This document shows positions 1 through 22,745 of a stretch of DNA of 64,000 nt, one piece after another. The translations under genes were made by a program, and so were the position numbers. The first letter of the stretch is position 1, and every line of letters starts with the position of its first letter. This DNA is from Macrostomum lignano. Its lineage: Eukaryota. The notes beneath the pieces are model-generated. The model did no database searches. It saw nothing but the letters and a program-made list of their open reading frames with translations, and had not been told where the DNA came from. Location: positions 620,001 through 684,000 of the forward strand of contig NIVC01000006.1 of the NCBI GenBank assembly GCA_002269645.1, written 5' to 3'.

Positions 1-24
1 ATTCCATATTTCATCTATTCCCAG

Positions 25-470: not shown

Positions 471-849
471 TCTTATCTCCCACTCCCCATCTCCCACTTC
501 CCACGCCCTCACTGGTCATTCAAGAACGCAAATACTACATAACTGAAACTAGCGATTGAAACGCTATTAAGCAATTTTTAGCGATTTCTGAATACAAAAA
601 GTTAATAAAAGCAAAAGTTAAAAGCTTCTTCTTCGTAAAATATGCCTTTCTTCTACAATGCCAACGGGGATCTCATGCAAACACCAAAGCTTTGTGGGTT
701 TTAATCGGTTTGCAGGTCTGTAAATATACTTACTGTTTTTCTGCTTCTTGTACTTATTTTTGTATCGCGAATGCCATTCGCCCGCGCCCTGCATTTCCTT
801 CATGCATAGCATCTATTCCCATCTTTTTTGGCTACAAATCACCCATCCA

Positions 850-1140
850 CCATGTCTAATCTCCGATCTCCCACGTCTAATCTCAAATCTCGCATATCTA
901 ATCTAAGATCATCCACGTCTAATCTCAAATTGCTATGTCTAATCTCCGATCTACTATATCTAATCTACGATCTACCATATCTAAACTCCAATCTCCCAAA
1001 TATAATGTCTAATCTTCCATATTTAAACTCAGATCTCTCATATCTAATCTTCGACCTTTTATATGAAATCTCCGATCTCCCTGGTCTACAATCTAATCTC
1101 ACTTATCTCACTCTTGAGATCTCGTGCAATCTTCACTTCT
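850..1140. repeat. Degenerate low-complexity repeat (TCTAATCTC-like, ~7/21-bp periodicity)
   Basis: Recurrent tctaatctc/atctaat words; duplicated at ~23595-23885. Confidence 0.6.
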
Positions 1141-2940: not shown

Positions 2941-5900
2941 TCAGGCTGCATTCTGCCGCATGCCCAAAGTCGGATACTTCAGCGGCCTTCGGATGGTCAG
3001 CTCGCAGCAGGGCACCTGTTGTCCATTGCTCCGATCGAGCACCCTGTTGATCACTCGGGGCACAACGGCGGTGAACTCTTCGCGATCCTGATTGAAATCA
3101 TCAGCCACCACTGAGCACAACTGCTGCGTGAACAAGCCGCCACTTTCCGGGTGTCGGCCGCTCAATCGTCCAGGCGATGTGCTATAAAAGTACATGCAGT
3201 CTTCCAAAGACACCTGATTGACCTGTTGAAACAGGCGGTGATTTGCTGGCGCGTCGCGGCAGGATTGAATAAAAAACAACTTTGGTTTGTCCTTCAGCTG
3301 CTGGCAGAGCTGGAACTTTGAGTAGATAAGCTGGAGAGCCACTTGTCTTCCATCGTGAGAGTAGATAAAATCGTGACCGCCGTGGCTCATGAGGCACACA
3401 ATGATGGCTTTGGAGTTTCTCAGCTCCTCTTCCGAGCAGATATTGGCAGGCAGGTGGTCGAAAAAGTGCGCGTTAACGTTTTGTACCTGCCTGCAGTCGA
3501 AGCCGAGGGAGGTAAAGCAGTGGTAAAGCGCGTTTTCGGCCATATCCGCCATGGAGCCCAGGCGTCGCGGCAGGTCCAGCCCAACGAAATCGTAGATGTT
3601 GATCACCAGAGCGATGCCCCGGTGGATGCCGTCCATGGGGTATGGCCCGGCTCTACTGGAGTCTTCCTGACCCCCAGTGGATTCGTTCGGTTCGCCGCCG
3701 CCCGTGGCGCCCTCTTCTTCTCGACCGCTTCCTCCGGGTCCGGAGCCCGAGGGGGGTGGCGGCTGGTCGCCGTTGCCTTGTTCGTCTTGTTCCATTGTGA
3801 CGCCTTGACTCGACAGGTTGGCTAGGCGCCGAATTCTGCAGTGAGGCGGTAAGTGAATGTGCGCTTGGTTATCGTGTCAGAATAGGTGACTTCACAAGGG
3901 TTGCTCAGGAGCCCTGGTACCATTCCCCTTCTTTCAGAAACGTACGAGCGTTACAATTTCTGCATCTCCTTTCCCAGCATGATTGTTTGTTTACGAAAAA
4001 ATTGTGCACAGCTGGAGCATCTTGTGCGGGTTAGTTTTGGTTGAACACTAAGAAGTAACGTGCGATAATCGATGCGAAATACCTTGTTCGTATTACTCGT
4101 AACACCAAGTACTCGTATTTAAAACAAGATTTTTTAAAGCGTCTTGGTGGTCGATGAACGTTAAATGTTTGCGCTGAAACTTTAACCAATCAAACTTACA
4201 ATTTCTCTAAAACCGTAGCGCACTCGTAGTGCTCGCAGAACTTCGCCCACTGCTGAGCGTTCATCTTCCGCTCGCCTTCCCTCCTGCAGAAGTCAGCGTC
4301 TGGTTTGTTTAGCCGCTGTCCCAGCTCAAGGAGAACGCTTTTGTGACCGCATCGAGCGGCCCAGATCAGAGGGGTGTTGCCGGAAAAGTCTGCCAGCTTT
4401 AAATTGGCACCTAGGTTGCACAGTTCGCGAGCTGTCAACTCCAATCCCAGCTTTGCGGCGTACAGGATTGCCGAGTATCGCATCGCATCCTGCAATGAAT
4501 TTCGTACTATCATTTTAAAGGGTTAGCTTGTGAAATCAGAGTCCGAAACTATCTTCTTTAAAATGGGCTCCCTGTGTATTTTTGGACGTCTAAGGCTGTA
4601 TCCATCATAGGGACGTTTTCGAAGTTGGAGCAGGTACGGGTATCTTGGTGCATTACTATTCAGTGTGATTGCATAGCACGATTGAACTACCTTTTGGTAC
4701 TACACTCTGTGTTGTCAATCTCAGTTATGTCAGCTTGATCGCGGCACAATGAAGATGAGGCCAATAAGTAAATTACTTCAAAGTTCGTCATCCGATCAAA
4801 GAGTCCTTCCAGCTCTTTCCATCTTGTCAGAAATCTCAAAAGACATGTTTGTCCGGACTGACTGACAAAAGCGTTCGATTAGAGTTTAGAGGATTAAAAC
4901 CACCATTTGTATCGATTTAAATACACGGGAACTGCTTTCGCCTTTCTGCCTCTGACGATAATATGAGTACATTAAACTCAATTGTAAATCAATAATTTTC
5001 TCAGTAAAGAAACTCATACCTGACGATTGATATCTGCTCCCATATTGACGAGCGGCTCCAGAACGTCTGTGCGGTTATTTTTGGCCGCAAGAATCAGTGG
5101 CGTCTGACGTAGATTGTCCTCGGCATTGATTTCCGCCTTCAAAGCGCTCTCGTTACTTTTAAAAGCCTCGCTAAACGCCGCCAGTACACTCTTGTGTCCC
5201 TTGACGGCAGCCCAGCACAGGGCGGTCCGGCCCTGCACATCTTTTTCACCGATCTCCAAGGATTTTTTGAGCATCTCGCTGACGATCTCGTCCTTGCCTT
5301 TGATGCACGCAATCATCAGCGGAGTTTGTCTCATTGGCCCGAAAGTTTGTTTGCACTTTTCCGGAGTGTCGCTCCGCTCTAAGAGCTGCTGGTCCGACCA
5401 CTGGTCCGGTGATGCCGGCCTGAAATGGTTTAATAGTTAGCCTGTCTAGAATTGAATGTAGCGAGCATTCTGTAAGTCTTTTTAACACACTTGTCAGTCA
5501 CCAATTACACGAAGTACATGCAGCGTGCAATACGCTCTAGTTTTCTAATTAGTCATCTGTGAACAAAGCACAAGCTTTAAAATATTTTATTTAGCAAACC
5601 ATTATTTAAAGATATAATGCACATGCACTTACAGAGGTTCCTCAGTAAAGCCATCTAGGAAAAACTTCTTAGTCAGGCTGGTCACGGCTGACGCACCGGA
5701 ACCGAATCTCTCAGTTCCCCTCTTCATCGCGGCCAGGCCCAGGCGTCTGTTCACCTCTGCTACCACGGTCTCAATGTGCTCCTTGCTGAACTTCTCATCG
5801 CGAATGACGGAGCAAACTGTATCCGAAAGTGACCCGGTGCTGCCGCCACTGCACAGAAGAAATTCGTGCTCAGGCAGACGGAACGAGGACTCCTCCAGTG

Positions 5901-8473
5901 AGCAGGCCTCAAGGCCCTCCGGCTGCTTCTCTGTTTGAATGAAGAAGACCTTCGGCTTGTCCTTCAGACCGGGGCACTGGCTGGCTCGAAATCGGGCCAC
6001 GATGTCTCTGACTTCGATTTCTTCTCCGTCGCTGGCAAAGACGCTGCCACCAGTGCCGTGTCCGATGAGGAAGCACACGAAGCTGCTTATGTCAGCGAGA
6101 TCCTGCGAAGTTACCACATTGTCAATGCATCTCCAAAAATCTGTACACCGAGGATTGTTGTATTTCTCAACAATAAAACTGAGTTTTTTGAAAGCATCCT
6201 CTATGTTTTGAGCCTCGTTTTCGAGATTTTTTGAGGGTGGAAACGTCGAAGTGTCGCCGCATTGTTCCACGGTAATAATGAGGCACAACCCCTTTTCTCG
6301 AGTCGCCATCTCAAAAGTGTCGCTAGTAGACGACCTGTTTGGGATTAGAAAAAGCAACCTGTTTGTATTGCAGGGTGATTTGCAGATAAATTAACTTTAT
6401 TTGACACTCACGATGCGTCGGGCATTAGAGCAAGTTTTGCTCCGTCTTGTGGACTTTCTGTAGGTGTGCTTGGTTCGGATGGACCCGCAATGGCTGAAAG
6501 TTTAGGGGTACCGAGTATTTAGGACATTAGTTCATAAGTTGCTCTAATTATGCTCGATAACTCTAATTTATCAATCAAGCCTGGGTTAGTATATAGTGGC
6601 TTACCCCGTCCGTGAAGAAGAAACGGGTGTTTAAGAAGTTCAGTAGCCGACTTCCTTTGATCTCTTTTCTGAGCGGTGCAGTTTCGGTAGAAGTCCTTTA
6701 AAGTGTTCGGGCAATTGTCGGGCAGGGGTGGTGCTCCCTGGTTTTTAACCCTGCGAACGATGGCTAGCATGTTCTTGCAGTCCCGGTGAGGCCGGTCTCC
6801 AGTCACCATCTGGTAAATCACGCAGCCGAACGCCCAGATGTCGGAGGCGCAGCTGTACGGAGTGTCTTCCGTTCCCTCCGTCAGAAACAGCTCGGGCGCC
6901 ATGAACGCTGGATCGCCCTTTGGATTTCCAGTCACGTGATCAGAGGCCGACTCAACGAGTTGAACTGCCAAGCCAAAGTCGATTAGCTTAATACTTCTGT
7001 TATCTCCTAACACCATGATTGTGCGACAGTTCACGTCTCTGTGAATAATTATCCTTGGAGCCATTGTGTGAAGGTAAGATAGGGCGCTACAGATCTGGAA
7101 GGCAACAGGAATAAATTTGAAGCTGAATTCAATTATTCAGTAAATTTTTTCACAATTTTATCCTACCTGTTTTGCAAGCTGTGATACAGTGTCGTAGTCT
7201 AGCGGCTTGCATCTGTTGATGAAGCTCTCCAGTGTTTGGCCATCAATCAGCTCCATCGAGACCAAAACGGACGGCTCGGCTGTCACTAGCGACATGTCCA
7301 GAAACCGGACAATATTTTCATGTTCCAACTTACAAAGACGCTTCTCATCATTGAAAATTTCTTTTAACTTTCCAAGCTGCTGGTCCTGCTGCTGGTCCTC
7401 GCCCAGCTGTACAGGCAGTCGGATGACCTTCGCCGCCCGACGCTTGGTGCCCTGCTTCTCCACAATTTCCAGCACATCGCTGTGCGCGCCTCGGGCTATG
7501 TGTCGCTTCTTTATCCAGCCAGGAAAAACCTCGGCTTCCTCCGGGCTGAAAATCAATATAGAAATTATTGCACCATCTCGAAGATAGGGTCCATGAGAAT
7601 TGCCCGCAGACAAATTGCCCGCCGAGTTCCTCCCGCCGAGGTTTGCCCGCAATGCTTTTTTCCTGCAGCTCATTTACCCATTTGTCTGCATTGCATTCTC
7701 AATGCTTAGTACATGTAAATCTTAACAAAGAGATTTACGAGTACACGATCAAAACGTTTTGCATGATAGTAACTGCTTATCAAATGATTTTTTGGGGGGG
7801 GGGCAATGCAGACAGAATCTAGCTGCCAAATGCGCTGCAGTAAAAAAGCACTGCGGGCAAACCTCGGCGGGAAAAAACTCGGCGGGCAACTCGCTCGCGG
7901 GTAATTCACTAGCGGGCAAATTGCACTGCGGGCAAATCTCGGCGGACAATTCTCGGCGGGCAATTCTCGGCGGGCAAATCTCCTGCGGGCAAATCTCGGC
8001 GGGCAATTTGTCTGCGGGCATTTCTCGTGCTCCCGTGCGACGCTAAGCTACCCCAATCAGTCTTTTCGTATCTTTTATTTCAGAATCGTCCAAGAGAAAT
8101 TGCACGCTGGCGCATAGAGTGCGACTTTTCAATATGGCTGAGTATAAGTTAATTTAACTTTTAACATTTAAACTTGCTTGCTAAAGGCAGGGACGTAGCC
8201 AGGATTTCCGATTAGGGAGGCACGTCTGCTAGAAATTGGAGGCCCCAAGCGCCGGATTACATTAGCCCTAATAGCTCCGCCGGTCAAAGATTGAATAAAT
8301 AAATTTACAGTTCATTTAGAATTGATTTGAACAAAATAGCAATATTTGACCTGCGCAGCCAAGGATGACCAAAAAGACTTTGACAATTCTCCATTTAAAG
8401 TACGAGTTTGGAAACAATGCAACGAATTCACTAATCAACTCTGTATTAGTTAATACATTTACCAAGGCTGCAT
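2941..8473 (-). CDS. Gene A: 8-exon kinase-like / pseudo-caspase / ankyrin-repeat / caspase fusion protein, 1082 aa
   Basis: Exons (minus): 8473-8463, 7545-7167, 7094-6605, 6493-6412, 6334-5633, 5419-5020, 4489-4200, 3835-2941. Total 3249 nt; all introns GT..AG, phases 2,0,1,2,2,0,2, no internal stops. Kinase motifs AAK, HRDVNCRT, DFG, APE, SDIWAFGC. Pseudo-caspase IGHG..KPKVFFIQTEK. ANK motifs TPLMIAC, TALCWAA, TPLILAA, TPLIWAA. Caspase MSHG..KPKLFFIQSCRD. The 11-nt first exon (ATG CAG CCT TG|gtaaat) is the least certain part. Confidence 0.85.
7587..8034. mobile_element. MITE-like element with GGG...CCC termini in intron 1 of gene A
   Basis: Left gggtccatgagaattgcccgcagacaaattgcccgccgag is the near-perfect inverse of right ctcggcgggcaatttgtctgcgggcatttctcgtgctccc. 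The imperfect inverted repeat extends ~110 bp, with internal GCGGGCAAA subrepeats. Absent from copy A'. No clear TSD. Confidence 0.7.
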
Positions 8474-9195
8474 TTTGAGCAGAGTACAGGACTGGGGTCT
8501 CCTCAGGTAGAATTCTGTAGGCTTGGTCTTGACAACGAGAGCTTTGCAAGTAGATAGATTATGTAGACTGCGCTGTCTAGTTACTTGTAGACAGAGGGCC
8601 AAAATGGCGGGTGGAGGGGAGGAGGGAGGGTGGCATGAAACACATTGGAGTAATGCACGGGGCGGGCGGCCAGTCCTCTCTACCCGCATTTACCCTGCGC
8701 AGCACCAACCCCAGTGAGCGGCAGAAAGGCAGAAAACTGCATGCACAACTGTACAATACGGAAACAAGAGCTATGTGTATAGCCTTTATGGCGGATAGCT
8801 GAAAAAGCAAAAACTCTAAAGTACGTTTTTGTAATCGGGTCTGATATGGGTTCGGCTGAATTTGAAAAATGAAGACAAGATGAGCGACGCTACTAAAAGC
8901 GCTGCTGGTTTTGCAACGATATTGTAGCCTCTACGCCAAAGCACGTGACAAATGCTTTAGGGTATGAGAGCTCTTTAGTGCTGGAATGTACGCCAAAGAT
9001 ATGGTACCTTGTTCAGACTTCTTCCCTAGATGCACACTGTGTCAGACAGTGGTTAGGGCATATGAATAAAAATGAATAATGTGACAACCTCAAAATTGGG
9101 TTGCAGAAAATTACGCCAGTTTTCCAGCGTTAAGATTTGCTTAGTAGCGAAATCATTGTTGTAGGGCGATTAAATTAAACGAGAACTCCCTGTCC
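8474..9195. promoter_or_regulatory. Putative bidirectional promoter / 5' UTR region between divergent genes A and B
   Basis: Predicted start codons at 8473 (minus) and 9196 (plus). Purine-rich G-tract at ~8609-8635, GGGGCGGG at ~8659, CACGTG at ~8942. Conserved at 30795-31511. Confidence 0.45.
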
Positions 9196-10169
9196 ATGGC
9201 CGAAGGTTCTGAGCCAGGGTAAGAAATAAAACCAAAATTAACGCTTTTATCGAACTTTTTAAGCCATGTATTATTAATACTTTCAGATTTCAAATTGACT
9301 TAAATATAACAAACTTGCTTTTGCTTGCGATTCATTTTGGGATGTTCTAGGAATCGCTTTTGCCGCCTCAAAAAGACTATAGACCTTGAGCTTGCCCCAA
9401 GTGAATGTTGCATAATCTTCAAGCCCTTGCCAGTATCGATACCGTTGAATTGATCAAATATTGCACCATTTCGTAGGCTCTACGACGAGAAATGGGACAA
9501 GGTGAAGCTCCTCAGTCGAGGAGAGTTCGGCGAAGAGGTGCACGAGGTGCTCACCGACTTGAAGAATGCCTGCGCCGCTAAAACCATCCGCCTTCCAGTC
9601 ACCGAATCGCATCAGGAGTCGGGAGACTTAAAGAACATCGATCGCGTAGTGAAAACAACTCAACAGCTTTGCCGTCTGCGTCACGACAACATCATCCGTT
9701 TCTACGAAATCAAGCACAAGCAGTCGGAGTCAACCGTTGAGGTTCTGATGGAGCTGATCACCGACAAGACACTCGGCGAGTTCATTGGTAGTAAATGTCT
9801 GCCGGAAGAAAAAGCTAGGATTTTGTTAAAGCAGGTGAGTGATGATATTGAGCACATTGATCGTAGTATAATATCTCGAGATTACTTGCCTACTACTGAC
9901 GGGGGCGCAGGCGCCGCGATTGGGCAGCGAGTCCTCTATCGCAACCTCAAGGTAAAGGAGACCACTGTTTAACTTGAGGGTGCGCCCAGCCCCCGCCAGT
10001 AGTCGACAAGTTTGCAGAGGAGGCATCGGCATCGGCGACCCTCATCTCCGGGCCGATATCCCGGACAAAGGCGCGAAGGTCACAGATGTTGTCTGTGTCC
10101 CTGAGAATGCAAATCTCCCTGAGGTCGGTTCTGTTTTGCGAGATCAGATATTCCGAGACTTTCCTGTTT
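9196..10169 (+). pseudogene. 5'-only copy of gene B (exon 1 9196-9218, exon 2 9477-9834, part of intron 2), truncated at the duplication breakpoint
   Basis: Near-identical to 31512-32487. Encodes only the kinase N-lobe (SRGEFG, AAK); the sequence switches to Polinton DNA at 10170. Confidence 0.85.
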
Positions 10170-10309
10170 TCAAAGGAAATTGATGATCTAAATTTTCTTT
10201 TTACATTCAAGGGCAGAGAATTTTTATAGCGCAAATGTAAAGTAACTATGAGAAATTTTTGGTAAGGCAAAAATTTTCTGGCGAGATTAAGTAGTTGAAT
10301 TGCATCCAT
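10170..10309 (-). pseudogene. 5' stub of the next Polinton gene (position typical of the adenain-like protease), cut at the junction
   Basis: ATG lies 5 nt after the capsid stop (MDAIQLLNLARKFLPYQKFL...) and reads into host intron DNA past 10169. The protease identity is a positional guess only. Confidence 0.3.
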
Positions 10310-10314
10310 GTCAA

Positions 10315-11598
10315 TTAAGATGAATAGTCCAGCAAAAGCTCTCGGTGCTTGGTGACCTCAATCAGCGAGTCATACAGGCACATAGCAATCAGGGACACCG
10401 CTTCATTCAGAGCCTGTTGGAAGCGAATCTCCAGCCGCAGGTTGCCCTCCTTCTGTCCGTACCACAGAGCCGCTCCCTCGGGTGTGAGATCGAATGCAAA
10501 CACCGTGCTGTTGTTGGAGAAGAGCTGGTAGGGGATCCACGGAACCGAGTTTGTGTGGCTTGCAGATTGACAGCTTTTCAGGTAGTGCAAGTATTCTCTT
10601 ACAAAGGAATTGTTTTCAGGTGTGAAGGCGCCGTGGCACACGGTTTCCCCACCTTTCTTTAGAGCCAATCGGCTAAGGTTGAAGCTCTGGAACTGGAACG
10701 GGCTCGCGTGATGATGACCGTTGAATGCTCGGTGGCTCACGAAGGCCAGCATGATAAACTTCGGCAATTTTCCATGAGTGAATCCTTCAATGTTTTTTGA
10801 CTGAATACCCTGGGGTAGGATGAAGTTCTGCATTTCAGTTCGCTCGATGGGATACAGTGCATTTTGGTTTGTCAACCCCTGCTCGTGGGCCAGGCTGATG
10901 TGGGGCATCACTTTGACTCGGCGAAGATGCAGAATGCTGTGAGAGATTTCCATTCGGTATGCCGCGTTGTTTGCATTCGGGGTTCTGATGGCAAAGGCCC
11001 CATCGCTGGGGACCAGTTTGATGTGCAGGTGCAGATTGCTTAGCAGAAACACTGGGCACTGGAAAACATCGCTGAAGAGCGGCCCCGCATACTCCATCCA
11101 TTGGGATTCCCTGTGGCTCTCCGTGTGCTCTTCAGCTGCCGCGTTCGGCTCCAGGAAGCCAGCAGGGTAAAGTTTTAGTTGCTGGGCATCGGATGAGCTC
11201 ATTAGTGCTTTGAAGTACGCATGGTAGGGATAGAGCTGGTCTCCACCAGACACCACTCGCTGGTTAATGCTCACAATTACATCTGAGAAGGCTGTAGACA
11301 GAACAAAATTTTCTGGGTGCACGTCACTGTCTCTGCGCTCGGTGATGATGCCATCTCCATCTCGAACATCCTCCCTCAGCAAACCCCCATCCAGTCTCAC
11401 AAGGCGGCAGCGAATATAAAGAAAAGAATTCAGCAGATCTGTGTATTCATCGGCAGATTGGTGGCAGTCAAATTCAATGGGAGAGTTTGCAACAATGGAA
11501 TTAACTGGGTGAATATCAACATAAGTAGCTTTTTCAATGCAGGTTTGTAGAACGGGCGTCTTAAATAAATCAAGTCTGGGATTGAATCCGTAAGCCAT
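10315..11598 (-). CDS. Polinton major capsid protein (double jelly-roll, PY/hexon-like), 427 aa
   Basis: N-terminal LDLFxxPxLQTxIE..P...PIEF...EYTDL..SFLYIRCRLVRLDG; C-terminal YQLF....TVFAFDLTP...GNLRLEIRFQQAL. Both are typical of metazoan Polinton MCPs. Confidence 0.88.
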   Translation of the reverse strand: MAYGFNPRLDLFKTPVLQTCIEKATYVDIHPVNSIVANSPIEFDCHQSADEYTDLLNSFLYIRCRLVRLDGGLLREDVRDGDGIITERRDSDVHPENFVLSTAFSDVIVSINQRVVSGGDQLYPYHAYFKALMSSSDAQQLKLYPAGFLEPNAAAEEHTESHRESQWMEYAGPLFSDVFQCPVFLLSNLHLHIKLVPSDGAFAIRTPNANNAAYRMEISHSILHLRRVKVMPHISLAHEQGLTNQNALYPIERTEMQNFILPQGIQSKNIEGFTHGKLPKFIMLAFVSHRAFNGHHHASPFQFQSFNLSRLALKKGGETVCHGAFTPENNSFVREYLHYLKSCQSASHTNSVPWIPYQLFSNNSTVFAFDLTPEGAALWYGQKEGNLRLEIRFQQALNEAVSLIAMCLYDSLIEVTKHRELLLDYSS

Positions 11599-11600
11599 GT

Positions 11601-11978
11601 CTATGACAGAGAGTCGAGCACGCGTTTCACAGTTTTCTTGCTGACTTTTTGCTTTCGCTTTCCTCCGCCTGCTCTATTCTTCTTTGCTTTCGTCTTCCTA
11701 TTCTTAAGCTTTTTCCCACTAGCCTTGCTTGACCTCTTATTGCGATTTCCACCAGTTGCCTTTCGGGTGCCCTTCTTTTTCTTCAATCGTTTCGGACTTG
11801 CTTCAGTATTTCTTTTGCGCCTGACGTTGCTAAGCGTCGAGGCTGATGATGATGATATAGCCGCTGGCGGAGGCTGGTATGTCATGATCCCTGGGAAGCT
11901 CCCACAGCCATAGAGTGCAGGCTTTTCGTGTCCTGTCCTCACCCCCGAATATTGCTGGATTAGCTGCTGGTAGTTCAT
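11601..11978 (-). CDS. Small highly basic protein (Lys/Arg-rich C-half), candidate virion core / DNA-condensing protein, 125 aa
   Basis: Its ATG (11978) overlaps the penton TGA (ATGA). Sequence includes RRKRN..PKRLKKKKGTRKA..KKLKNRKTKAKKNR..KRKQKVSKK. It lies between penton and MCP. Confidence 0.6.
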   Translation of the reverse strand: MNYQQLIQQYSGVRTGHEKPALYGCGSFPGIMTYQPPPAAISSSSASTLSNVRRKRNTEASPKRLKKKKGTRKATGGNRNKRSSKASGKKLKNRKTKAKKNRAGGGKRKQKVSKKTVKRVLDSLS

Positions 11979-12802
11979 TGAATGCGTTTCTCCTGAATTT
12001 GAACTGTAAGCAGAACAGGGCTGTGAGTCTGTGCAATCAGTGGGCAACCATAGATGTCACGGAGCTGAACTCGAATGCTGTGAAGAAGACTGATTCGTTG
12101 AATCGGGAAGAATATTGTTTTCTTAAATATTTTTGTTTGATAGTTGCCCCATTCAATGCCGGCTTTCATTCCAACTGTTCTCAACAAGGAGCTCCAGTTG
12201 CAATTAGTTGACTCAACGATACTGCAGTGCACATTGATTAAGCTGGTGCGCGGGCAGCCAATGCAATGCTCGGACACGCGGCTCCCTGGCTGGATTTTCA
12301 CAGCCTGGTTTCCAAATCCCAGCCAATGCAGAATTTTACTAGATGTAAGAAACAGCTCTGCTCTCGCAGTGTTGTTGTGCACCACAGTTCGTGAGTTGTG
12401 GATTTCGAACTTCATACCGAATTCCCTGTTGCCACTACGCCCCATCAGGCCGGACTCATCAGCCTCCATCTCAGACTCCCTGTCACTCATTGCATCAAAG
12501 AACAGCGAATCAGAGTTGGCCAGCAGCTCATTCAGGCGCTCCACCAGCTCCTCCACTCTAGCAAAGCGTCCGGGTTGAAGAACCAGGGCCTCATGCTCTC
12601 TTCCATCTGAGACAGTGAAGCAGTAAGGCTCGTCAACATTGAACCATGCAGCAGGCAGATGGATTTCAGCCAGACCTGCCTCATAGTCCACATTTCGATC
12701 CAAGTAAATAGGTGAAGGCAGGTAAAAATTAAAGTCACTAGGAGTACCTTCAGCATGCTCACTGTTAATCAAAATAGTTCGCATTATAATGATAAACTTC
12801 AA
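11975..12802 (-). CDS. Polinton minor capsid protein (PX/penton), 275 aa
   Basis: F.FYLPSPIYL..DYEAGLAEIHLPAAWFNV N-terminal motif; C-terminal LLRTV...FFPI...IRVQLRDIYG motif. Confidence 0.8.
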   Translation of the reverse strand: MKFIIIMRTILINSEHAEGTPSDFNFYLPSPIYLDRNVDYEAGLAEIHLPAAWFNVDEPYCFTVSDGREHEALVLQPGRFARVEELVERLNELLANSDSLFFDAMSDRESEMEADESGLMGRSGNREFGMKFEIHNSRTVVHNNTARAELFLTSSKILHWLGFGNQAVKIQPGSRVSEHCIGCPRTSLINVHCSIVESTNCNWSSLLRTVGMKAGIEWGNYQTKIFKKTIFFPIQRISLLHSIRVQLRDIYGCPLIAQTHSPVLLTVQIQEKRIQ

Positions 12803-12821
12803 GATGAGGGATGTGCCAAAG

Positions 12822-13892
12822 CTAAACCTTTCTTAAGTCTTTTTCATCCACCCAGCCAGTCGAGTCGTAGCCCGCTCATTTCACCAGATAGCGAATTTTT
12901 CCCTTCCGCTTCTCCGTTTTCAGGATCTTCTCAATCACATACAGCCGCTGTGAGTCCGGGACAGCCTGCAGCTCGTGCTCATGGAAGAGTCCTCGAATCT
13001 CTTGCCCCCGCATGTCTTTAATCTTGTACATGTAGGGATAATGTTTTGGGGCTCTGCTCACCACGGTGTACACTTCCTCACTCCAGCTCGCTTTGTATCC
13101 CTTTTTGAATAGCCGTGGAGCATTGGAAATTCTCACTGACTGGTTTTCAGCGAATTTAGGCTTCCTTAATTTTTCTAGAGTCTCGACTGCTTTTCCGTCG
13201 TACAGGTTCATCCACACTTCAGATTCATTCTCTTTGCAGACACTAGTGGGTGCCATTTTGATGCTTCTGTGGTAGGTATTGTTGTAGGATTTTACCAGCT
13301 TAGGCAGCACATCAAGCCAGTGCAGTGTGCTCTTGTAGGTGAAGTAGCGCCACATTCTACTTTTCAGAGTCCGATTCCATCGCTCAATGACAGCCGCCTT
13401 CTGCTCGCTGTTAGTTGGGAAAGCCAGAATCCCTCTGTCAATGCAGTATTGACGGAAAGTGGAGTTGATAAATTCCTTCCCCTGATCTGTGCGAACTGTG
13501 CGCGGCTGTCGCTTTGAACTTCTCAGTATGCTCTCGAATGCTGACTTCACTTCTGCAGCAGATTTATTTTTCAGTGCCTTGGCCCAAGCACATTTTGAGA
13601 GCACGTCAATGCATGTGAGAATATATTTGTAGCCTTTATTATGCTTTGCAAATGGAATCATTTCCACTAAGTCAAGTTCCCACTGATCATCGATTGCGCG
13701 CACTATGATTGGGGCCCTTGGATATCGCCTCCTAGCTGGCTTGTGCAGAGTGTGCACTGGCTGCTCGCTGAGCCACTGCTCAATGCTCTTTGCAGATATT
13801 CGATCACCTCTTTGCCTCACTTCATGCAGCAACTTTGAGGCACAAGAAAAACTAGCCGGTTGCTCAGGTTTCAAATAAATTTTCTCCATCAT
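12822..13892 (-). CDS. Polinton retroviral-like (c-)integrase with C-terminal chromodomain; nonsense codon at 12876-12878
   Basis: DDE triad WELDL / RTDQGKEF / VIERWNRTLK is intact. Reading through the TGA gives YLVK*AGYDSTGWVDEKDL, which completes the chromodomain YLVKW..Y...W motif. Confidence 0.9.
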
Positions 13893-14219
13893 GGGTTTAT
13901 CAAGATACGTGCCTATCCACCTGCTCTAGCTGTACAGTATTTTTTTCTTAAGTAGAAATTTATATTCCAATTAAATGATAGAGAAACGAGTGGCAAATTA
14001 ATTTATTACTGTCAGATTGAAACCTCTAACATCGTAACAGTCGGTGTATTTTCCGAAAGCAAACAATCCATAAAAACGAACACTAAAACACTCGCACACC
14101 AGCATTTCAGAAATAGCAGAGATAAAAAACAGCATAGTGCCGTCAGATATAGGCTGGATAATCATGTGCAAGCTAAAAGTAATTTAGTTAGTCCAATGCA
14201 TTCAAAGCATTCTAGCTGT

Positions 14220-14993
14220 TCAGTTATCAAAGCGAACATTGGGCAGCCTCATCGCGTCCTGCCGACGAAGTTGAAATGGCAGCTTTCGCTTCCTGCTGCT
14301 GCTGCTCACCGTCGAAGCCGCTGCATGCGCCCTGAACTGATACCACACCGGATCTTCCTCAAGGTTGGTGTCCCGCTGCGGAAGCAGTCCAGCATCAGAA
14401 TCAACCAAAGGTATCGGTGTGGATGTGATAGGCTCAGTCACAATGCGCGGCCTTGTGGGCGAGCTAACGTCCTCGTCATCAGCATGCTCTCCGCCCTCAT
14501 CAGTCTCCATTATGGGCTTCGTGTCCTGGTCAGCCTCCAACTTGAGCTTCTTGTCCTCTTCCTCCTCTTCCTCATCAGACTCCAGCTCGTACTGCATTGA
14601 GTTCCTCAAGGGAGCCACCAGCTGACCGTCGATCCAGGAGGCGATTTTCCAGAGCTTCTGCCACAGCGGCGGAGTCAGTGGTACGGCGTTTCGTCTCAAA
14701 AACTCCTCGCAGCAATCTTCCGGCAGCCGTTTGAGCCAAATGATGCCGCCTTTGACTTCCACAAACTTATCGAAGCCGAGTTTCACGACCTTGGGCTCGT
14801 TGTTGCGTGCAGAAATCACAAGTGAGCGTTTCACCTCCTTCAATTTCTTCCATTGGTGAACATTCAGGTTGAATCCTGGGACGCCTGGCTTCAGACTTGC
14901 CGTGCTGCCGTGTCGGTAAAACTTGCGAATAGCGATAAATTTTTGTCCTTCAAACTCCTGGACTTGTGCCTTATAGCCTTCACAGATGTCCAT
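14220..14993 (-). CDS. PC4 (p15/Sub1)-like ssDNA-binding protein with acidic linker, 257 aa
   Basis: VQEFEGQKFIAIRKFY...LKPGVPGFNLNVHQWKKL matches the PC4 fold. A second degenerate copy is KFVEV..GIIWLKR...AVPLTPPLWQKL. Confidence 0.72.
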   Translation of the reverse strand: MDICEGYKAQVQEFEGQKFIAIRKFYRHGSTASLKPGVPGFNLNVHQWKKLKEVKRSLVISARNNEPKVVKLGFDKFVEVKGGIIWLKRLPEDCCEEFLRRNAVPLTPPLWQKLWKIASWIDGQLVAPLRNSMQYELESDEEEEEEDKKLKLEADQDTKPIMETDEGGEHADDEDVSSPTRPRIVTEPITSTPIPLVDSDAGLLPQRDTNLEEDPVWYQFRAHAAASTVSSSSRKRKLPFQLRRQDAMRLPNVRFDN

Positions 14994-15097
14994 TTTCCTT
15001 TCGCAATTGAAAACTCACAAAAGTTAAAAGCTGAGGAAAAGTTCGGATGAAATTTTGGATTTGAAAAATTGAGAATTCTTTCTTGTCAGTTTCGGGG

Positions 15098-15158
15098 CTT
15101 ATATACCCTCGACCGAACCACCCCAAACCACCCATCCCACTCCGGGCTCTGTGATTGG
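15098..15158 (-). promoter_or_regulatory. TATA box (TATATAAG, 15105-15098) and CCAAT box (15158-15154) upstream of the PC4-like gene
   Basis: Both motifs are on the minus strand, ~50 nt apart and ~105-165 nt upstream of ATG 14993. Confidence 0.5.
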
Positions 15159-15225
15159 CTCTTTCGCAAACATTATTTCCAATTACATAGATTAACATTC
15201 ATTCAGCTAAGCTAACCCACTCCAT

Positions 15226-16125
15226 CCTATCTCTGCAGTGTTAACCACCCCCAATGCAAAGAGATAGGCCGCCTCTCCTCCTATCTCTGCAGTGTTAACC
15301 ATCTCCAGTGTAAAGAGATAGGCCGCCTCTCCTCCTATCACTCCAGTGTTAAGCAGAGATAGAGCTCATATCTCTGCAGTGCTTAGCCGTCCCCAATGCA
15401 CAGAGATAGAGCTCATATCTCTGCAGTGCTTAGCCGTCCCCAATGCACAGAGATAGAGCTCATATCTCTGCAGTGCTTAGCCGTCCCCAATGCACAGAGA
15501 TAGAGCTCATATCTCTGCAGTGCTTAGCCGTCCCCAATGCACAGAGATAGAGCTCATATCTCTGCAGTGCTTAGCCGTCCCCAATGCACAGAGATAGAGC
15601 TCATATCTCTGCAGTGCTTAGCCGTCCCCAATGCACAGAGATAGAGCTCATATCTCTGCAGTGCTTAGCCGTCCCCAATGCACAGAGATAGAGCTCATAT
15701 CTCTGCAGTGCTTAGCCGTCCCCAATGCACAGAGATAGAGCTCATATCTCTGCAGTGCTTAGCCGTCCCAATGCACAGAGATAGAGCTCATATCTCTGCA
15801 GTGCTTAGCCGTCCCCAATGCACAGAGATAGAGCTCATATCTCTGCAGTGCTTAGCCGTCCCCAATGCACAGAGATAGAGCTCATATCTCTGCAGTGCTT
15901 AGCCGTCCCCAATGCACAGAGATAGAGCTCATATCTCTGCAGTGCTTAGCCGTCCCCAATGCACAGAGATAGAGCTCATATCTCTGCAGTGCTTAGCCGT
16001 CCCCAATGCACAGAGATAGAGCTCATATCTCTGCAGTGCTTAGCCGTCCCCAATGCACAGAGATAGAGCTCATATCTCTGCAGTGCTTAGCCGTCCCCAA
16101 TGCACAGAGATAGGGCTCATATCTC
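15226..16125. repeat. 47-bp tandem array (AGAGATAGAGCTCATATCTCTGCAGTGCTTAGCCGTCCCCAATGCAC), ~16-17 copies, preceded by degenerate units; likely Polinton subterminal/TIR repeats
   Basis: Near-perfect tandem copies; each unit contains the hairpin CAGAGATA-gagctca-TATCTCTG. Confidence 0.92.
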
Positions 16126-16554
16126 CGCAGTGTATTTTTCCCTGTACATTTGCATTGCCGCCTATCTCGCCAGTGCTAGTGCGGCAGTATCATAATTCGC
16201 CCTACTACTGGAGAGAGATGGGGGGGATGGGGAGAGAGATGGGGAGAGCATTTCAACATTTCAAAGCTTCCATTCCGTGCTTCAATAACATTTGTCAGTT
16301 ATTTCTCGTAATTCTCTGTTTAGCCAGGTCCATTCTTGACAGACAGCTCACATTTCAGATGGTTTTTAAAGGAGTCTGGGCTACATGTAAGGGGACGACA
16401 AGCTTTTGTGTTTGCGGATGAGAAGACTGGGTGAATTTTCTGACTGACACACTGGCTGAGAGAGTTCCAGTGTGTTAGTGGGACCATCTGTCGGACTAAA
16501 ATACACATTCCTGACAATTGCTTTGCGTGTACTTTCTGGCTTCTGAACTCTCGT

Positions 16555-17368
16555 GGAAATCTTGTCAGATAGTAGAGAGATTCTCTGACTGGTAATCTTG
16601 TCAAATAGTAGAGAGATTCTCTGACTGGTAATCTTGTCAAATAGTAGAGAGATTCTCTGACTGGTAATCTTGTCAGATAGTAGAGAGATTCTCTGACTGG
16701 TAATCTTGTCAAATAGTAGAGAGATTCTCTGACAAGAAATCTTGTCAGATAGTAGAGAGATTCTCTGACTGGTAATCTTGTCAAATAGTAGAGAGATTCT
16801 CTGACTGGTAATCTTGTCAAATAGTAGAGAGATTCTCTGACTGGTAATCTTGTCAGATAGTAGAGAGATTCTCTGACTGGTAATCTTGTCAGATAGTAGA
16901 GAGATTCTCTGACAAGAAATATTGTCAGATAGTGGAGAGATTCTCTGACAAGAAATCTTGTCAGATAGTGGAGAGATTCTCTGACAAGAAATCTTGTCAG
17001 ATAGTAGAGAGATTCTCTGACAAGAAATCTTGTCAGATAGAGAGATACTCTAGTTGGGATCTTGGTAGATAGAGAGATACTCTAGTTGGGATCTCGGCAG
17101 ATAGAGAGATACTCTAGTTGGGATCTTGGTAGATAGAGAGATACTCTAGTTGGGATCTCGGCAGATAGAGAGATACTCTAGTTGGGATCTTGGTAGATAG
17201 AGAGATACTCTAGTTGGGATTTTGGTAGATAGAGGGATACTCTGGTTGGGATCTTGGTAGATAGAGAGATACTCTGGTTGGGATCTTGTCAGATAGAGAG
17301 ATACTCTAGTTGGGATCTTGGTAGATAGAGAGATACTCTAGTTGGGATCTTGGTAGATAGAGAGAAAA
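16555..17368. repeat. Compound minisatellite: 36-bp unit (~13 copies) switching to a related 32-bp unit (~10 copies) near 17035
   Basis: Units GATAGTAGAGAGATTCTCTGACTGGTAATCTTGTCA and GATAGAGAGATACTCTAGTTGGGATCTTGGTA. Confidence 0.92.
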
Positions 17369-17714
17369 TCTTTGTCATGGACAAAAACTTACAAACAGCT
17401 AAAAATACAATAATTAGTGAATGCCTTCTTCCGGGCCGAACCCGGCAACAAAAGTCACGCGCAACTCTTCATCTTCATCAGTGTCTTCTATTTGCAGAGA
17501 AGAAAATTCGTAGATAGAATTATTTTTATAGAAATTTTTGCACATCCAAAGGTAACACCTGCAAAAATATTTTTAATGGCATTTCGGAACTCGACAACAA
17601 GCATTTTTGAAACGGTATATCAATTCAGTGTAAAGTTAGTATTTTTTGTTTTTTTTAGCTGTTATTGACTCATCACCGCGTCTTCCAAATTAATCTCATA
17701 ATATTTTCTTTTCC

Positions 17715-17975
17715 CTGATCCCATTTTCTTTGATCCCTTCTCTAATCCGTTCTCTAATCCTCTTTTCTAATCCCTTCTCTGAGCCCTTCTCTAATCCCTT
17801 CTCTAATCCCTTCTCTAATCCCTTTCTCTCTAATCCCTTTCTCTCTAATCCCTTTCTCTCTAATCCCTTCTCTAATCCCTTCTCTAATCCCTTCTCTAAT
17901 CCCTTTCTCTCTAATCCCTTTCTCTCTAATCCCTTCTCTAATCCCTTCTCTAATCCCTTCTCTAATCCCTTCTCT
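17715..17975. repeat. 12/15-bp purine-pyrimidine minisatellite (CTCTAATCCCTT / CTCTAATCCCTTTCT)n
   Basis: Direct tandem repetition. Confidence 0.9.
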
Positions 17976-18057
17976 CTGATCACCAACTTTTCCCATGTCT
18001 AGTCTAAAATCCCGAAACCGCCAACCCTCGCGGCCTCTCCCTTCCACCCGTCTCCGC

Positions 18058-20867: not shown

Positions 20868-21174
20868 AGTTTATCCGAATGTCTCCTTTGCAAAGCTCAG
20901 AATTTCGTTGTCTGTAGGCAAATTTGATGCTTTTGGATGAAAATCTCTCTTTGGGTTTTGTGTGTTTGTTAATAACAATACCTACTACAGAATCTGTTGT
21001 CCTTGGTTACCAATCCTATCCAATCATCTGCGCATTGGGAAGGGATGGAGAAGGGAGAAAGGGGAGAGAGATTAAAGGAAGACTGAGTTAAAGTACTTTC
21101 GTTTGGAAGAGTTTATTACAATTCTTGCGAGCAATATCATTTCTAAGAATTTTTTCTTTTTGGAGTGTTGAAAT

Positions 21175-22060
21175 ACCATCCCTAGGTATACATGTAGCAT
21201 CTCTAGGTATAAAATCTCCAGGTAAAAGATCTCTAGGTAAAATAAGATCTCCAGGTATAAGATCTCCAGGTATAAGATCTCTAGGTATAAGGTCTCCAGG
21301 TATAAGATCTCTAGGAATAAGGTCTCTAGGTATAAGGTCTCCAGGTATAAGATCTCCAGGTATAAGATCTCCAGGTATAAGATCTCTAGGTATAAGGTCT
21401 CCAGGTATAAGATCTCCAGGTATAAGATCTCCAGGTATAATATCTCCAGGTATAAGATCTCCAGTTATAAGATCTCCAAGTATAAGATCTCTAGGTATAA
21501 GGTCTCCAGGTATAAGATCTCCAGGTATAAGATCTCTAGGTATAAGGTCTCCAGGTATAAGATCTCCAGGTATAAGATCTCCAGGTATAAGATCTCCAGG
21601 TATAAGATCTCTAAGTATAAGATCTCTAGGTATAAGGTCTCCAGGTATAAGATCTCCAGGTATAAGATCTCTAGGAATAAGGTCTCTAGGTATAAGATCT
21701 CCAGGTATAAGATCTCCAGGTATAAGATCTCCAGGTAAAAGATCTCTAGGTAAAATAAGATCTCCAGGTATAAGATCTCCAGGTATAAGATCTCCAAGTA
21801 TAAGATCTCCAGGTATAATATCTCTAGGTATAAGATCTCCAGGTATAAGATCTCCAGGTATAAGATCTCCAAGTATAAGATCTCTAGGTATAAGGTCTCC
21901 AGGTATAAGATCTCCAGGTATAAGATCTCCAGGTATAAGATCTCCAGGTATAAGATCTCTAGGCAAGATATCCAGGTTTAAGATCTGTAGGAATAAGATC
22001 TCCATGTACAAGATCTCTAAGTATAGGATCTCTAGGCAAGATTTCTAAGTGTAAAACCTC
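21175..22060. repeat. 15-bp minisatellite (CCAGGTATAAGATCT)n, >50 copies
   Basis: Direct tandem repetition with CCAGG/CTAGG and GATCT/GGTCT variants. Confidence 0.95.
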
Positions 22061-22745
22061 TAGGTACATATCAATAGTACTATTTGCAAAAAAGCAATGC
22101 TCAAGCAAGACTCAGATTTAATTCTTAGGAATAGTAATACCTTTAGCAATATTGAAAGTGTCTTTTTTCTAAGACCAAGCACTCGGCCGCTTGTCAGAGA
22201 AGTCATTATACAATTTCTTTTGACACACAAAATGCCGAACTTTCTTCCCTGGAGCACAATTTCTTTATGTTGAAAATGCAATTCCGAGTGCTTTAATTAG
22301 AAATCTGATTGACTTGGGTCGATTGGTTAAAACCTGCAAAGGACCTTGTTGTACCTCGAAAAAACTTCAATGCGTAGGTGGGAACAAATAAGGAAGAATG
22401 CTTTATGCCTGAGAAATCTTGAATGCCACAGGCGCATGTCAATATTCTCTTTCTAGTAAGAAAGTCGCACAAGTGGCTGATAGTCGTTACAGATGGCTAC
22501 TCATGCGAATCTGCAATGCTGCTGTGGTAAAACAATGGAAAACTGGCACTGAAAATGCACTTGCATTTCTAATATGCGCGTCACTCAATGCTCAATGCTT
22601 TCTGATTCTATTGAATAGGAGCTCATTCTATTGTGTCTTGCTTCCTTATCTGTTTACGAGTACCCTTTTGAAGCTGCGAGACAGCTGGCTTCTGCAAGAC
22701 TTTTGCATACCTGTACTCGTACCTCTGCCCACTGCCACTTCCAGT

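What the first reader, a model, noticed from the sequence alone, without database searches (positions are those of the whole stretch)
8463..9218. Head-to-head paralog pair sharing a ~720-bp intergenic region, reminiscent of paired immune receptors
Seen: A (minus) and B (plus) start codons are ~720 bp apart (8473/9196, and again 30794/31512). The two are highly diverged in sequence yet share an architecture, with complementary states: A has HRD and QSCRD, B has HRQ and QACRG. Established: plant paired NLRs (RPS4/RRS1, RGA4/RGA5, Pik-1/Pik-2) are head-to-head, co-regulated sensor/executor pairs. Inference: A and B are co-transcribed from a bidirectional promoter and act as a heteromeric pair.
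Basis: inference. Interest (0 to 1): 0.7.

Follow-up and report, generated by a model that had tools for sequence, protein, structure and literature searches.

The report
Head-to-head flatworm kinase-caspase gene pair
Two old, diverged copies of an unusual flatworm (Macrostomum lignano) gene that fuses a kinase-like domain, a dead caspase, ankyrin repeats and a live caspase really do sit back-to-back about 720 bp apart, but nothing here shows that they act as a partnered "sensor/executor" pair.

Summary
The window is Macrostomum lignano DNA. Gene A (minus strand, ATG 8473 and 30794) and gene B (plus strand, ATG 9196 and 31512) face away from each other, 723 and 718 bp apart. Both have 8 exons with identical intron phases and the same architecture: Pkinase, a Cys-less pseudocaspase, ANK repeats, then a caspase. 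They are 40% identical. The quoted motifs are present: HRD/QSCRD in A and HRQ/QACRG in B.

The second pair is not independent evidence. It is a recent copy, 1-3% diverged. B of pair 1 stops after exon 2, and A of pair 2 carries a 1-nt frameshift.

The claimed "complementary states" are only half right. Both C-terminal caspases keep the His/Cys dyad and the Asp-pocket arginines. Both kinases are degenerate relative to the family consensus, B more so than A.

A third paralog, C, has a dead caspase (QANRG) and lies at 61.4-64 kb. A fourth type exists elsewhere in the genome. This makes the locus a paralog cluster rather than a closed pair.

The family was noted in 2024 as an M. lignano caspase with a kinase pro-domain. 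I found no NLR-type domain and no promoter signature. No expression or interaction data were available.

The best reading is an ancient inverted duplication of a lineage-specific long-prodomain caspase. Co-regulation and hetero-oligomerisation, as in FLIP/caspase-8, are plausible but untested.

The parts
2941..8473 (-). Gene A, copy 1 (A1). It has 8 coding exons: 8473-8463, 7545-7167, 7094-6605, 6493-6412, 6334-5633, 5419-5020, 4489-4200, 3835-2941. The product is 1082 aa: kinase-like domain (HRDVNCRT), pseudocaspase (GHG / IQTEKQ, no Cys), ANK repeats, Gly/Pro-rich linker, caspase (SHG / QSCRD).
   Evidence: Gene model with all introns GT-AG and an intact ORF. Pfam domains. 96% identical to the public model P0059. 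Motif tables.
8474..9195 (.). Spacer of 722 bp between the two start codons of pair 1. It presumably holds both promoters. It contains no ORF, no Rfam hit, no TE and no CpG island (GC 0.46, CpG o/e 0.70).
   Evidence: The three genomic copies differ by 1.4-2.8% here, the same as in introns.
9196..10169 (+). Gene B, copy 1 (B1), a 5' fragment only. It comprises exon 1 (9196-9218), exon 2 (9477-9834, kinase N-lobe) and 335 bp of intron 2. Homology to B2 stops at 10169.
   Evidence: Self-BLAST. Six-frame reading. No further B exons lie between 10170 and 22745.
10170..22745 (.). Sequence that replaces the rest of B1. It holds minus-strand ORFs including an integrase-core (rve) ORF at 12876-13892 and a PC4-like ORF at 14220-14993, followed by four satellite arrays (15.2-22.0 kb).
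25749..30794 (-). Gene A, copy 2 (A2). Exons: 30794-30784, 30303-29928, 29852-29363, 29251-29170, 29092-28388, 28235-27837, 27299-27007, 26643-25749. Exon 6 has a 1-nt deletion (CCGG to CCG, about 28197/28198) that shifts the frame.
   Evidence: The public protein P0059 of the same allele type reads through in frame, so the deletion may be an assembly indel.
30795..31511 (.). Spacer of pair 2 (717 bp).
31512..37073 (+). Gene B, copy 2 (B2), complete. It has 8 exons: 31512-31534, 31795-32152, 32930-33416, 33927-33984, 34136-34795, 35067-35481, 35580-35872, 36146-37073. The product is 1073 aa: pseudokinase (HRQINPST, alpha-C Glu to Thr), pseudocaspase (GCG / AQTHGA), ANK repeats, linker, caspase (SHG / QACRG).
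61384..64000 (-). Third paralog C, which runs off the window. It comprises a pseudocaspase exon (64000-63398), ANK exons (63215-62733 and 62702-62406), and a C-terminal caspase-like exon (62358-61384) with SHG but QANRG (catalytic Cys to Asn). It matches P0061, whose kinase is HRN/NFG.

Best explanation
SHOWN. A and B are ancient paralogs, 40% identical with synonymous sites saturated. They encode a Macrostomum-restricted multidomain caspase: N-terminal kinase-like domain, catalytically dead caspase domain, ANK repeats, disordered linker, and a C-terminal caspase with an intact catalytic dyad. They have the same 8-exon structure and intron phases, including a tiny first coding exon followed by a phase-2 intron. 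An inverted duplication that included exon 1 therefore created the head-to-head arrangement. Both genes are under purifying selection among the recent genomic copies (dN/dS about 0.26-0.32). The pair belongs to a local cluster that also holds paralog C.

INFERRED. Each protein is an initiator-type caspase with a long pro-domain. The degenerate kinase, pseudocaspase and ANK module likely serves as a regulatory or oligomerisation scaffold rather than as an enzyme. The pseudocaspase may play a FLIP-like partner role for the live caspase domain, in cis or between paralogs. The roughly 720-bp spacer carries both core promoters. These could be one bidirectional promoter or two back-to-back promoters descended from the duplicated ancestral one. 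Some co-regulation is therefore likely simply from proximity. Hetero-oligomers among A, B and C are plausible but not required by any evidence here.
For: Gene models and identical intron phases. Pfam architecture. 40% identity over the full length. Organism and public models P0001/P0059 with the same N-termini. A third genomic copy, L001, is also head-to-head with both genes intact. dN/dS of 0.26-0.32. The C-terminal caspases keep Arg179, His, Cys and Arg341, while the middle domains lack Cys and both arginines. The closest solved structures are caspase-7/3 (E about 1e-24) and WNK1 (E about 1e-32). Kinase motif degeneration relative to the family consensus. The architecture was found only in M. 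lignano in an exhaustive profile search of 1.84 billion representatives. PMC11463336 reports an M. lignano caspase with a kinase-like pro-domain as sister to platyhelminth ANK caspases, and reports loss of FADD in flatworms.
Against: No expression, TSS or interaction data were available. One public model of B (P0002) replaces exon 1 with 5' exons that lie antisense to A's kinase exons. If that model is real, the two transcription units overlap instead of sharing a simple promoter. The spacer shows no promoter hallmark: CpG o/e is 0.70 against 0.81 for the window, ATGGCGG is not enriched, and there is no inverted symmetry. In this window each pair has one damaged member (B1 truncated, A2 frameshifted). 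Enzymatic activity of any domain is predicted from residues only.
Confidence: 0.6

Rival explanations
1. A and B are an obligate sensor/executor pair, divergently transcribed from one bidirectional promoter. They work as a heteromer with complementary active and inactive domains, like plant paired NLRs.
For: Head-to-head with 718-723 bp between the ATGs and nothing in between. Adjacency is kept in all three genomic copies. B is a clear pseudokinase (HRQ, alpha-C Thr), whereas A keeps Lys, Glu, HRD-Asp and DFG. Paralog D fuses a pseudokinase and an active-looking kinase in one chain, and several family members have tandem kinase domains. That is a Rosetta-stone hint that kinase domains of this family work in pairs. 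Caspases act as dimers, and pseudocaspase/caspase heterodimers are known (cFLIP/caspase-8, PMC7586951 listed).
Against: The three copies are only 1-3% diverged, the level of the species' subgenomes, so their shared arrangement says nothing about selection for pairing. The caspase domains are not complementary, because both are intact. A's kinase has also lost the catalytic-loop Asn and the Gly-loop glycines. At least four paralog types exist, with C in the same cluster. Other family loci are unpaired. No NTPase or decoy domain is present. There is no promoter signature.
Confidence: 0.15
2. Passive relic. The head-to-head layout is just the footprint of an inverted tandem duplication. A, B and C now act independently, as homodimers or in different cells or conditions. 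The short spacer has no regulatory meaning beyond housing two separate promoters.
For: Divergent orientation is expected by chance for about a quarter of neighbouring genes. The cluster holds several family members in mixed orientations (A minus, B plus, C minus). The spacer is no more conserved than introns. No similarity remains between the two promoter-proximal halves. The family is a large lineage-specific expansion with much domain shuffling, including kinase+ANK fused to Mab21_C, Ras or caspase.
Against: A and B have stayed within about 720 bp of each other since a duplication old enough to reach 40% identity, in a repeat-rich, rearranging genome. Pseudoenzyme paralogs usually act through their active relatives.
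Confidence: 0.25
3. The doubled pair in this window is an assembly artefact. On this reading, homeologous or haplovariant copies were joined in tandem, and the damaged members (B1 fragment, A2 frameshift) are errors rather than biology.
For: The copies differ by 0.1-5.6% per exon in a mosaic pattern, similar to the S/L1/L2 subgenome divergence of 1.4-2.4%. 36% of Mlig_3_7 scaffold length is reported to be chimeric (PMC10733133). The A2 frameshift is a single G in a GG run, and the public protein of the same allele is in frame. L001 is collinear with copy 2 only.
Against: The B1 break is followed by 12.5 kb of unrelated TE and satellite sequence, after which the left flank restarts at 99.7% identity. 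That pattern also fits a real TE-associated segmental duplication. In either case the A-B head-to-head unit itself is seen in an independent scaffold.
Confidence: 0.3

Closest known systems
[quoted passage not shown]
   Same: Same organism and evidently the same family. ANK repeats lie upstream of a caspase domain, with a kinase-like domain at the N-terminus. The paper places the family as sister to the ANK caspases and near the DED (initiator) caspases.
   Different: In the main text searched (no supplementary files were held as text), the paper mentions one such caspase. It does not describe, there, the internal pseudocaspase domain, the A/B/C/D paralog types, their catalytic-residue states or their genomic arrangement. 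I did not reproduce the phylogeny. My word-indexed search with the caspase domain did not retrieve parasitic-flatworm ANK caspases.
Vertebrate CFLAR-CASP10-CASP8 paralog cluster (cFLIP-L pseudocaspase heterodimerising with caspase-8; PMC7586951)
   Same: A cluster of caspase paralogs made by local duplication. Some copies or domains have lost the catalytic Cys: the middle domains of A and B, and both caspase domains of C. The dead forms could regulate the live ones by heterodimerisation.
   Different: Here the pseudocaspase sits inside the same polypeptide as the live caspase. The pro-domain is kinase-like plus ANK instead of tandem DEDs. The orientation is head-to-head rather than tandem. Heterodimerisation is untested.
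Plant paired NLRs (RRS1/RPS4, RGA5/RGA4, Pik-1/Pik-2)
   Same: A head-to-head gene pair with a short shared upstream region, in a lineage-specific, rapidly duplicating family.
   Different: There is no NB-ARC/NACHT or LRR domain. The partners have identical architecture with no integrated decoy. They are paralogs of one another rather than members of distinct clades. No genetic or physical interdependence is known.
WNK and MAP3K-like kinases; pseudokinase/kinase partnerships (JAK JH2-JH1, RIPK3-MLKL)
   Same: The kinase domain is most similar to WNK1/3 among solved structures and shares the HRDxxC catalytic-loop context. B meets the classical pseudokinase criterion (HRD Asp lost). Paralog D has a tandem pseudokinase-kinase arrangement like the JAKs.
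   Different: The beta-3 Lys is present, unlike in WNKs. There are no WNK autoinhibitory or OSR1-binding regions. The catalytic-loop Asn is replaced by Thr in both A and B. No substrate or partner is known.

Membership tests
Caspases (peptidase family C14A) | Caspase (p20/p10) fold recognised by profile | tested here: met
   Peptidase_C14 hits: C-terminal domains at E=6e-37 (B) and 7.5e-33 (A); middle domains at E=1e-25 (B) and 2.5e-22 (A). The best PDB relatives are caspase-7/3.
Caspases (peptidase family C14A) | Catalytic His (SHG) and Cys (QACxG) dyad | tested here: met
   C-terminal domains: A has MSHG / QSCRD and B has MSHG / QACRG. The feature is NOT met in the middle domains (A GHG / QTEKQ; B GCG / QTHGA) or in paralog C's C-terminal domain (QANRG).
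Caspases (peptidase family C14A) | P1-Asp pocket arginines (Arg179, Arg341, caspase-1 numbering) | tested here: met
   By alignment to caspase-7, -4 and other caspases: A has PRRLG and SGR; B has QRRDG and SFR. Both are absent from the middle domains. Activity itself was not testable.
Active eukaryotic protein kinases | Beta-3 Lys, alpha-C Glu, HRD Asp, catalytic-loop Asn, DFG Asp, Gly-rich loop | tested here: not met
   A has Lys, Glu, HRD Asp and DFG present, but Asn is replaced by Thr (HRDVNCRT) and the Gly-loop is ARGAHSDV. B has Lys and DFG present, but Glu is replaced by Thr, Asp by Gln (HRQ) and Asn by Thr. The family consensus is GRGGFGEV / AAKTL / ESERNL / HRDINCSN / DFG. The fold itself is met (Pkinase).
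Platyhelminth ANK caspases | Ankyrin-repeat pro-domain immediately upstream of the caspase domain; monophyly with the flatworm ANK-caspase clade | tested here: inconclusive
   ANK repeats upstream of the caspase are met. An M. lignano ANK+caspase protein, P0177, is the closest outside relative at 36%. The clade relationship is taken from PMC11463336 and was not recomputed.
Paired NLR-type sensor/executor immune receptor pairs | Head-to-head genes with a short shared upstream region | tested here: met
   723 and 718 bp between the ATGs. The same arrangement is seen in L001.
Paired NLR-type sensor/executor immune receptor pairs | NB-ARC/NACHT NTPase core, with one partner carrying an integrated decoy domain | tested here: not met
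   Pfam finds only Pkinase, Peptidase_C14 and ANK, in the same order in both partners.
Paired NLR-type sensor/executor immune receptor pairs | Genetic interdependence and a physical complex of the two products | not testable with these tools
   No interaction or knock-down data were found. The structure tool predicts single chains only.
Bidirectional promoter gene pairs | Divergent TSSs less than 1 kb apart with no intervening gene | tested here: inconclusive
   The ATGs are about 720 bp apart. The annotated A-type gene in L001 reaches L001:9362, 639 bp from B's ATG. The TSSs are not known. P0002 suggests a possible upstream B exon inside A.
Bidirectional promoter gene pairs | Correlated expression; CpG-island or shared-motif signature | tested here: inconclusive
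   No CpG island (o/e 0.70). The ATGGCGG (YY1-like) motif occurs 8 times against 4.65 expected, with 10 of 100 shuffles at least as high. Expression was not testable.

The most novel reading that the evidence does not exclude
The A/B/C cluster encodes a Macrostomum-specific cell-death or innate-immune switch. Paralogous kinase-pseudocaspase-ANK-caspase proteins co-assemble through their (pseudo)kinase and (pseudo)caspase domains. The graded pseudoenzyme paralogs (B: dead kinase; C: dead kinase and dead caspases) tune or gate the live caspases, as FLIP does for caspase-8. This would functionally replace the FADD/DED platform that flatworms lost. The head-to-head A-B unit would ensure stoichiometric co-expression.
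Probability: 0.12. Interest if true: 0.7.

Novelty: new variant of a known kind. Interest (0 to 1): 0.35.

Why it matters
If A, B and C do co-assemble, this would be an animal example of a caspase activation module built from pseudokinase and pseudocaspase scaffolds instead of death-fold adaptors. It would occur in a lineage that lost FADD. It would also offer a tractable case for how enzyme/pseudoenzyme paralog sets evolve by local duplication, because M. lignano supports RNAi and transgenesis.

As it stands, the solid contribution is descriptive:
- corrected full-length gene models for A and B;
- recognition of an internal dead caspase domain;
- residue-level activity predictions for each domain;
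- the finding that the 'pair' is part of a cluster, and that its second occurrence is a recent and partly damaged copy.

A head-to-head paralog pair by itself is ordinary.

Tried and rejected
I used the two pseudocaspase exons instead.
3. Promoter evidence in the spacer came to nothing. The YY1-like ATGGCGG motif is not enriched. Only short chance repeats are present. There is no CpG island. The A-proximal and B-proximal halves show no residual inverted similarity: scores are within shuffles.
4. The Rfam scan of the whole window returned nothing.
5. I asked whether head-to-head pairing is a family habit. Three other kinase+ANK family loci (L002-L004) and the ANK-caspase locus L005 have no divergent paralog within 10 kb.
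6. I tried to test the arrangement in other flatworms. The caspase-domain homolog search returned only M. lignano P0177 and generic caspases, with no parasitic-flatworm ANK caspases, so no outside loci could be fetched. The architecture was found only in M. lignano.
7. Literature searches for the gene ID and for bidirectional promoters in M. lignano found no papers. The supplement of PMC11463336 is not held.
8. I considered structure prediction and dropped it. The tool returns single-chain confidence only, with no inter-domain or inter-chain information, and the folds are already certain from the profiles.
9. A-versus-B dN/dS could not be computed because synonymous sites are saturated.


Full report
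WHAT THE WINDOW IS

The sequence is eukaryotic, with short exons and GT-AG introns. My model of gene B is 97% identical to Macrostomum lignano protein BOX15_Mlig030125g1 (P0001) and 98% identical to a UniRef M. lignano protein (P0002). M. lignano is a free-living flatworm. It is a neopolyploid with three subgenomes about 1.4-2.4% apart, and its assembly is partly chimeric (PMC10733133).

CHECKING THE OBSERVATION

Six-frame reading and Pfam show the same domain order on both strands around the finding: Pkinase (split over two exons), Peptidase_C14, ankyrin repeats, Peptidase_C14. I built explicit gene models.

- A1 lies on the minus strand, has 8 exons from 8473 down to 2941, and encodes 1082 aa.
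- B2 lies on the plus strand, has 8 exons from 31512 to 37073, and encodes 1073 aa.
- All 14 introns are GT-AG, and the intron phases are the same in both genes.
- Each gene has a very short first coding exon (11 nt in A, 23 nt in B) followed by a phase-2 intron.

Independent public models agree. P0001 begins MAEGSEPGLYDEKW. The A-type protein P0059 begins MQLCTEETEIFPGW, which is the start and first splice of copy 2. A and B are 40% identical over their full length. The quoted motifs are present.

HOW INDEPENDENT THE TWO PAIRS ARE

They are not independent. Positions 1-10169 and 22746-32487 are a segmental duplication at 95-99.7% identity. Per-region differences between copy 1, copy 2 and a third genomic copy (L001, scaffold NIVC01000166.1) are mostly 0-3% and mosaic. 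The spacer differs by 1.4-2.8%, which is no more conserved than the introns. That is the divergence level of the species' subgenomes.

L001 is collinear with copy 2 and its downstream region up to window position 45068. Copy 1 is therefore the extra copy. It contains an intact A1, but only exons 1-2 of B. Homology stops at 10169 inside intron 2. It is followed by minus-strand ORFs including an integrase core (rve), and by 7 kb of satellites.

Copy 2 has an intact B2. A2 carries a 1-nt deletion in exon 6 that shifts the frame. The public protein of the same allele is in frame, so this may be an assembly indel. Both genes are intact in L001. Whether the tandem doubling is real or an assembly chimera cannot be decided here.

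WHAT THE PROTEINS ARE

C-terminal caspase domain. Its best solved relatives are caspase-7 and caspase-3 (E about 1e-24). In an alignment with diverse caspases, the C-terminal domains of both A and B keep the Arg179 equivalent, the SHG histidine, the catalytic cysteine (QSCRD in A, QACRG in B) and the Arg341 equivalent. Both are predicted to be Asp-directed proteases. QSCRD versus QACRG is a pentapeptide variant, not an on/off difference.

Middle caspase domain. In both proteins it lacks the cysteine (A: IQTEKQ; B: AQTHGA), both arginines and the Arg341 loop. A keeps the His, while B has Cys in its place. It is a pseudocaspase built into the same chain.

Kinase domain. It is closest to WNK1/3 among solved structures (E about 1e-32). 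I compared it with 30 kinase domains of the M. lignano family and with amphioxus relatives. Their consensus is GRGGFGEV / AAKTL / ESERNL / HRDINCSN / DFG.
- A keeps the beta-3 Lys, alpha-C Glu, HRD Asp and DFG. It has lost the catalytic-loop Asn (HRDVNCRT) and two of the three Gly-loop glycines.
- B additionally lacks the alpha-C Glu (Thr) and the HRD Asp (HRQ).
- B is therefore a clear pseudokinase and A is at best an impaired kinase.

FAMILY CONTEXT

A profile search returned further M. lignano paralogs.
- Type C is P0061/P0062. Its kinase is HRN with NFG.
- Type D is P0060/P0216. It has a tandem HRN pseudokinase plus an HRDLNCSN kinase, then a pseudocaspase and ANK repeats.
- The four types are about 40-50% identical to one another, so A and B are not each other's special partners by descent.
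- There are also more than 20 kinase+ANK proteins without a caspase, some fused to Mab-21_C or Ras.

Type C lies in this window on the minus strand at 61384-64000, running off the edge. Its C-terminal caspase domain reads QANRG, meaning the catalytic Cys is lost.

An exhaustive HMMER search of 1.84 billion representatives with the pseudocaspase exons found the kinase+pseudocaspase+ANK architecture only in M. lignano. The next hits are unrelated multi-caspase proteins, plus M. lignano LRAT-caspase and Ras/Roc-caspase fusions.

[quoted passage not shown] In the main text I could search, I found no description of the internal pseudocaspase, the paralog types or the genomic arrangement.

SELECTION AND AGE

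Between the recent copies, dN/dS is 0.26 for A1 versus the L001 copy and 0.32 for B2 versus the L001 copy. Both genes are therefore constrained. Between A and B the synonymous sites are saturated, so the duplication is old. No similarity remains between the two promoter-proximal halves of the spacer.

THE SPACER

It contains no ORF, TE, Rfam hit or CpG island (o/e 0.70 against 0.81 for the window), and no enriched motif. The annotated A-type gene in L001 extends to L001:9362, 85 nt upstream of its ATG and 639 bp from B's ATG. This shows that exon 1 of A is in a transcript-based model.

One caveat applies. P0002, an older model of B, replaces exon 1 with two exons that lie antisense to A's kinase exons (29584-29694 and 30138-30260) and have acceptable splice sites. 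This is probably an ab initio artefact of open antisense frames. If it is real, the two transcription units overlap.

INTERPRETATION

Shown: an ancient inverted duplication of a lineage-restricted long-prodomain caspase gene. It is retained under purifying selection and embedded in a cluster with a fully 'dead' paralog.

Inferred: the degenerate kinase, pseudocaspase and ANK module acts as a scaffold or regulator of the C-terminal caspase. The built-in pseudocaspase and the dead paralog C suggest FLIP-like regulation by (pseudo)caspase pairing, in cis or between paralogs. Tandem kinase domains in paralog D and other family members hint that kinase-domain pairing matters. Proximity makes some co-regulation of A and B likely.

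None of this singles out A-B as an obligate heteromer. The paired-NLR comparison is positional only: there is no NTPase core, no integrated decoy and no difference in architecture between the partners. Three other family loci and the ANK-caspase locus have no divergent partner.

VERDICT

The functional interpretation cannot be judged from sequence, and its main sequence argument is only half right. The thing itself is a new variant of a known kind: a caspase paralog cluster containing pseudoenzymes, in a family that has been partly published. Interest is moderate to low for the head-to-head arrangement and somewhat higher for the architecture and the graded loss of catalytic residues across A, B and C.

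Noticed in passing
window 61384-64000 (minus strand): A third family member (type C, matching P0061) lies at the right edge of the window. It has a pseudocaspase exon, two ANK exons and a C-terminal caspase-like exon with SHG but QANRG (catalytic Cys to Asn). The public model P0061 stops before this last exon.
   Followed up: partly
window ~28197/28198 (A2 exon 6, minus strand): There is a 1-nt deletion (CCGG to CCG) relative to copy 1, L001 and the public protein P0059. It shifts the A2 reading frame. It could be an assembly indel or a real pseudogenising change.
   Followed up: partly
window 9836-14993: B1 is cut in intron 2 at 10169. Beyond that lie long minus-strand ORFs: 10315-11598, 11601-12047 and 11975-12802 have no Pfam hit, 12876-13892 has an rve integrase core, and 14220-14993 is PC4-like. 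This is probably a transposable element of a kind I did not identify.
   Followed up: partly
window 35-468 and 22780-23213; 15220-16132; 16554-17365; 17718-17981; 18443-19793; 21199-22036; 39021-39387; 56027-57212: There are many satellite or minisatellite arrays with periods of 22, 47/54, 36/32, 12/66, 36, 15, 39 and 23/53 nt. The 36-nt array at 18.4-19.8 kb is GC-rich (56%), strongly C-skewed and open in all three plus-strand frames.
   Followed up: no
window 7600-8020 (A1 intron 1) and equivalent in copy 2 / L001: A GC-rich degenerate repeat (motif ...GCCCGCnGAGnTTTGCCCGC...) fills much of A's first intron. It accounts for large indels between the three copies (441-789 gap columns).
   Followed up: no
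window 41469-42410, 45353-46414, 52880-53899, 57661-58749, 60041-60373 (plus strand): There is a cluster of apparently intronless seven-transmembrane receptor-like ORFs (weak 7tm_1 match). It includes a 93% identical duplicate pair at 45255-46328 and 52782-53840.
   Followed up: partly
window 49110-50594 (plus strand): An intact 495-aa piggyBac-type transposase ORF (DDE_Tnp_1_7, E=1e-71) lies between the duplicated 7TM genes.
   Followed up: partly
window 29584-29694 and 30138-30260 (plus strand, antisense to A2 exons 3 and 2): The public protein P0002, an older model of gene B, starts with two exons antisense to gene A's kinase exons. It joins them to B exon 2 and skips B exon 1. This is likely an annotation artefact, but it would mean overlapping antisense transcription if real.
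   Followed up: partly
L002 (NIVC01000875.1) 20143-23647; proteins P0063-P0065, P0080, P0217, P0222: M. lignano has a large lineage-specific expansion of this kinase family fused to ANK repeats. Members have tandem kinase domains (three in a row in L002) and variable extra domains (Mab-21_C, Ras). The species also has other odd caspases (LRAT-caspase, Ras/Roc-caspase).
   Followed up: partly
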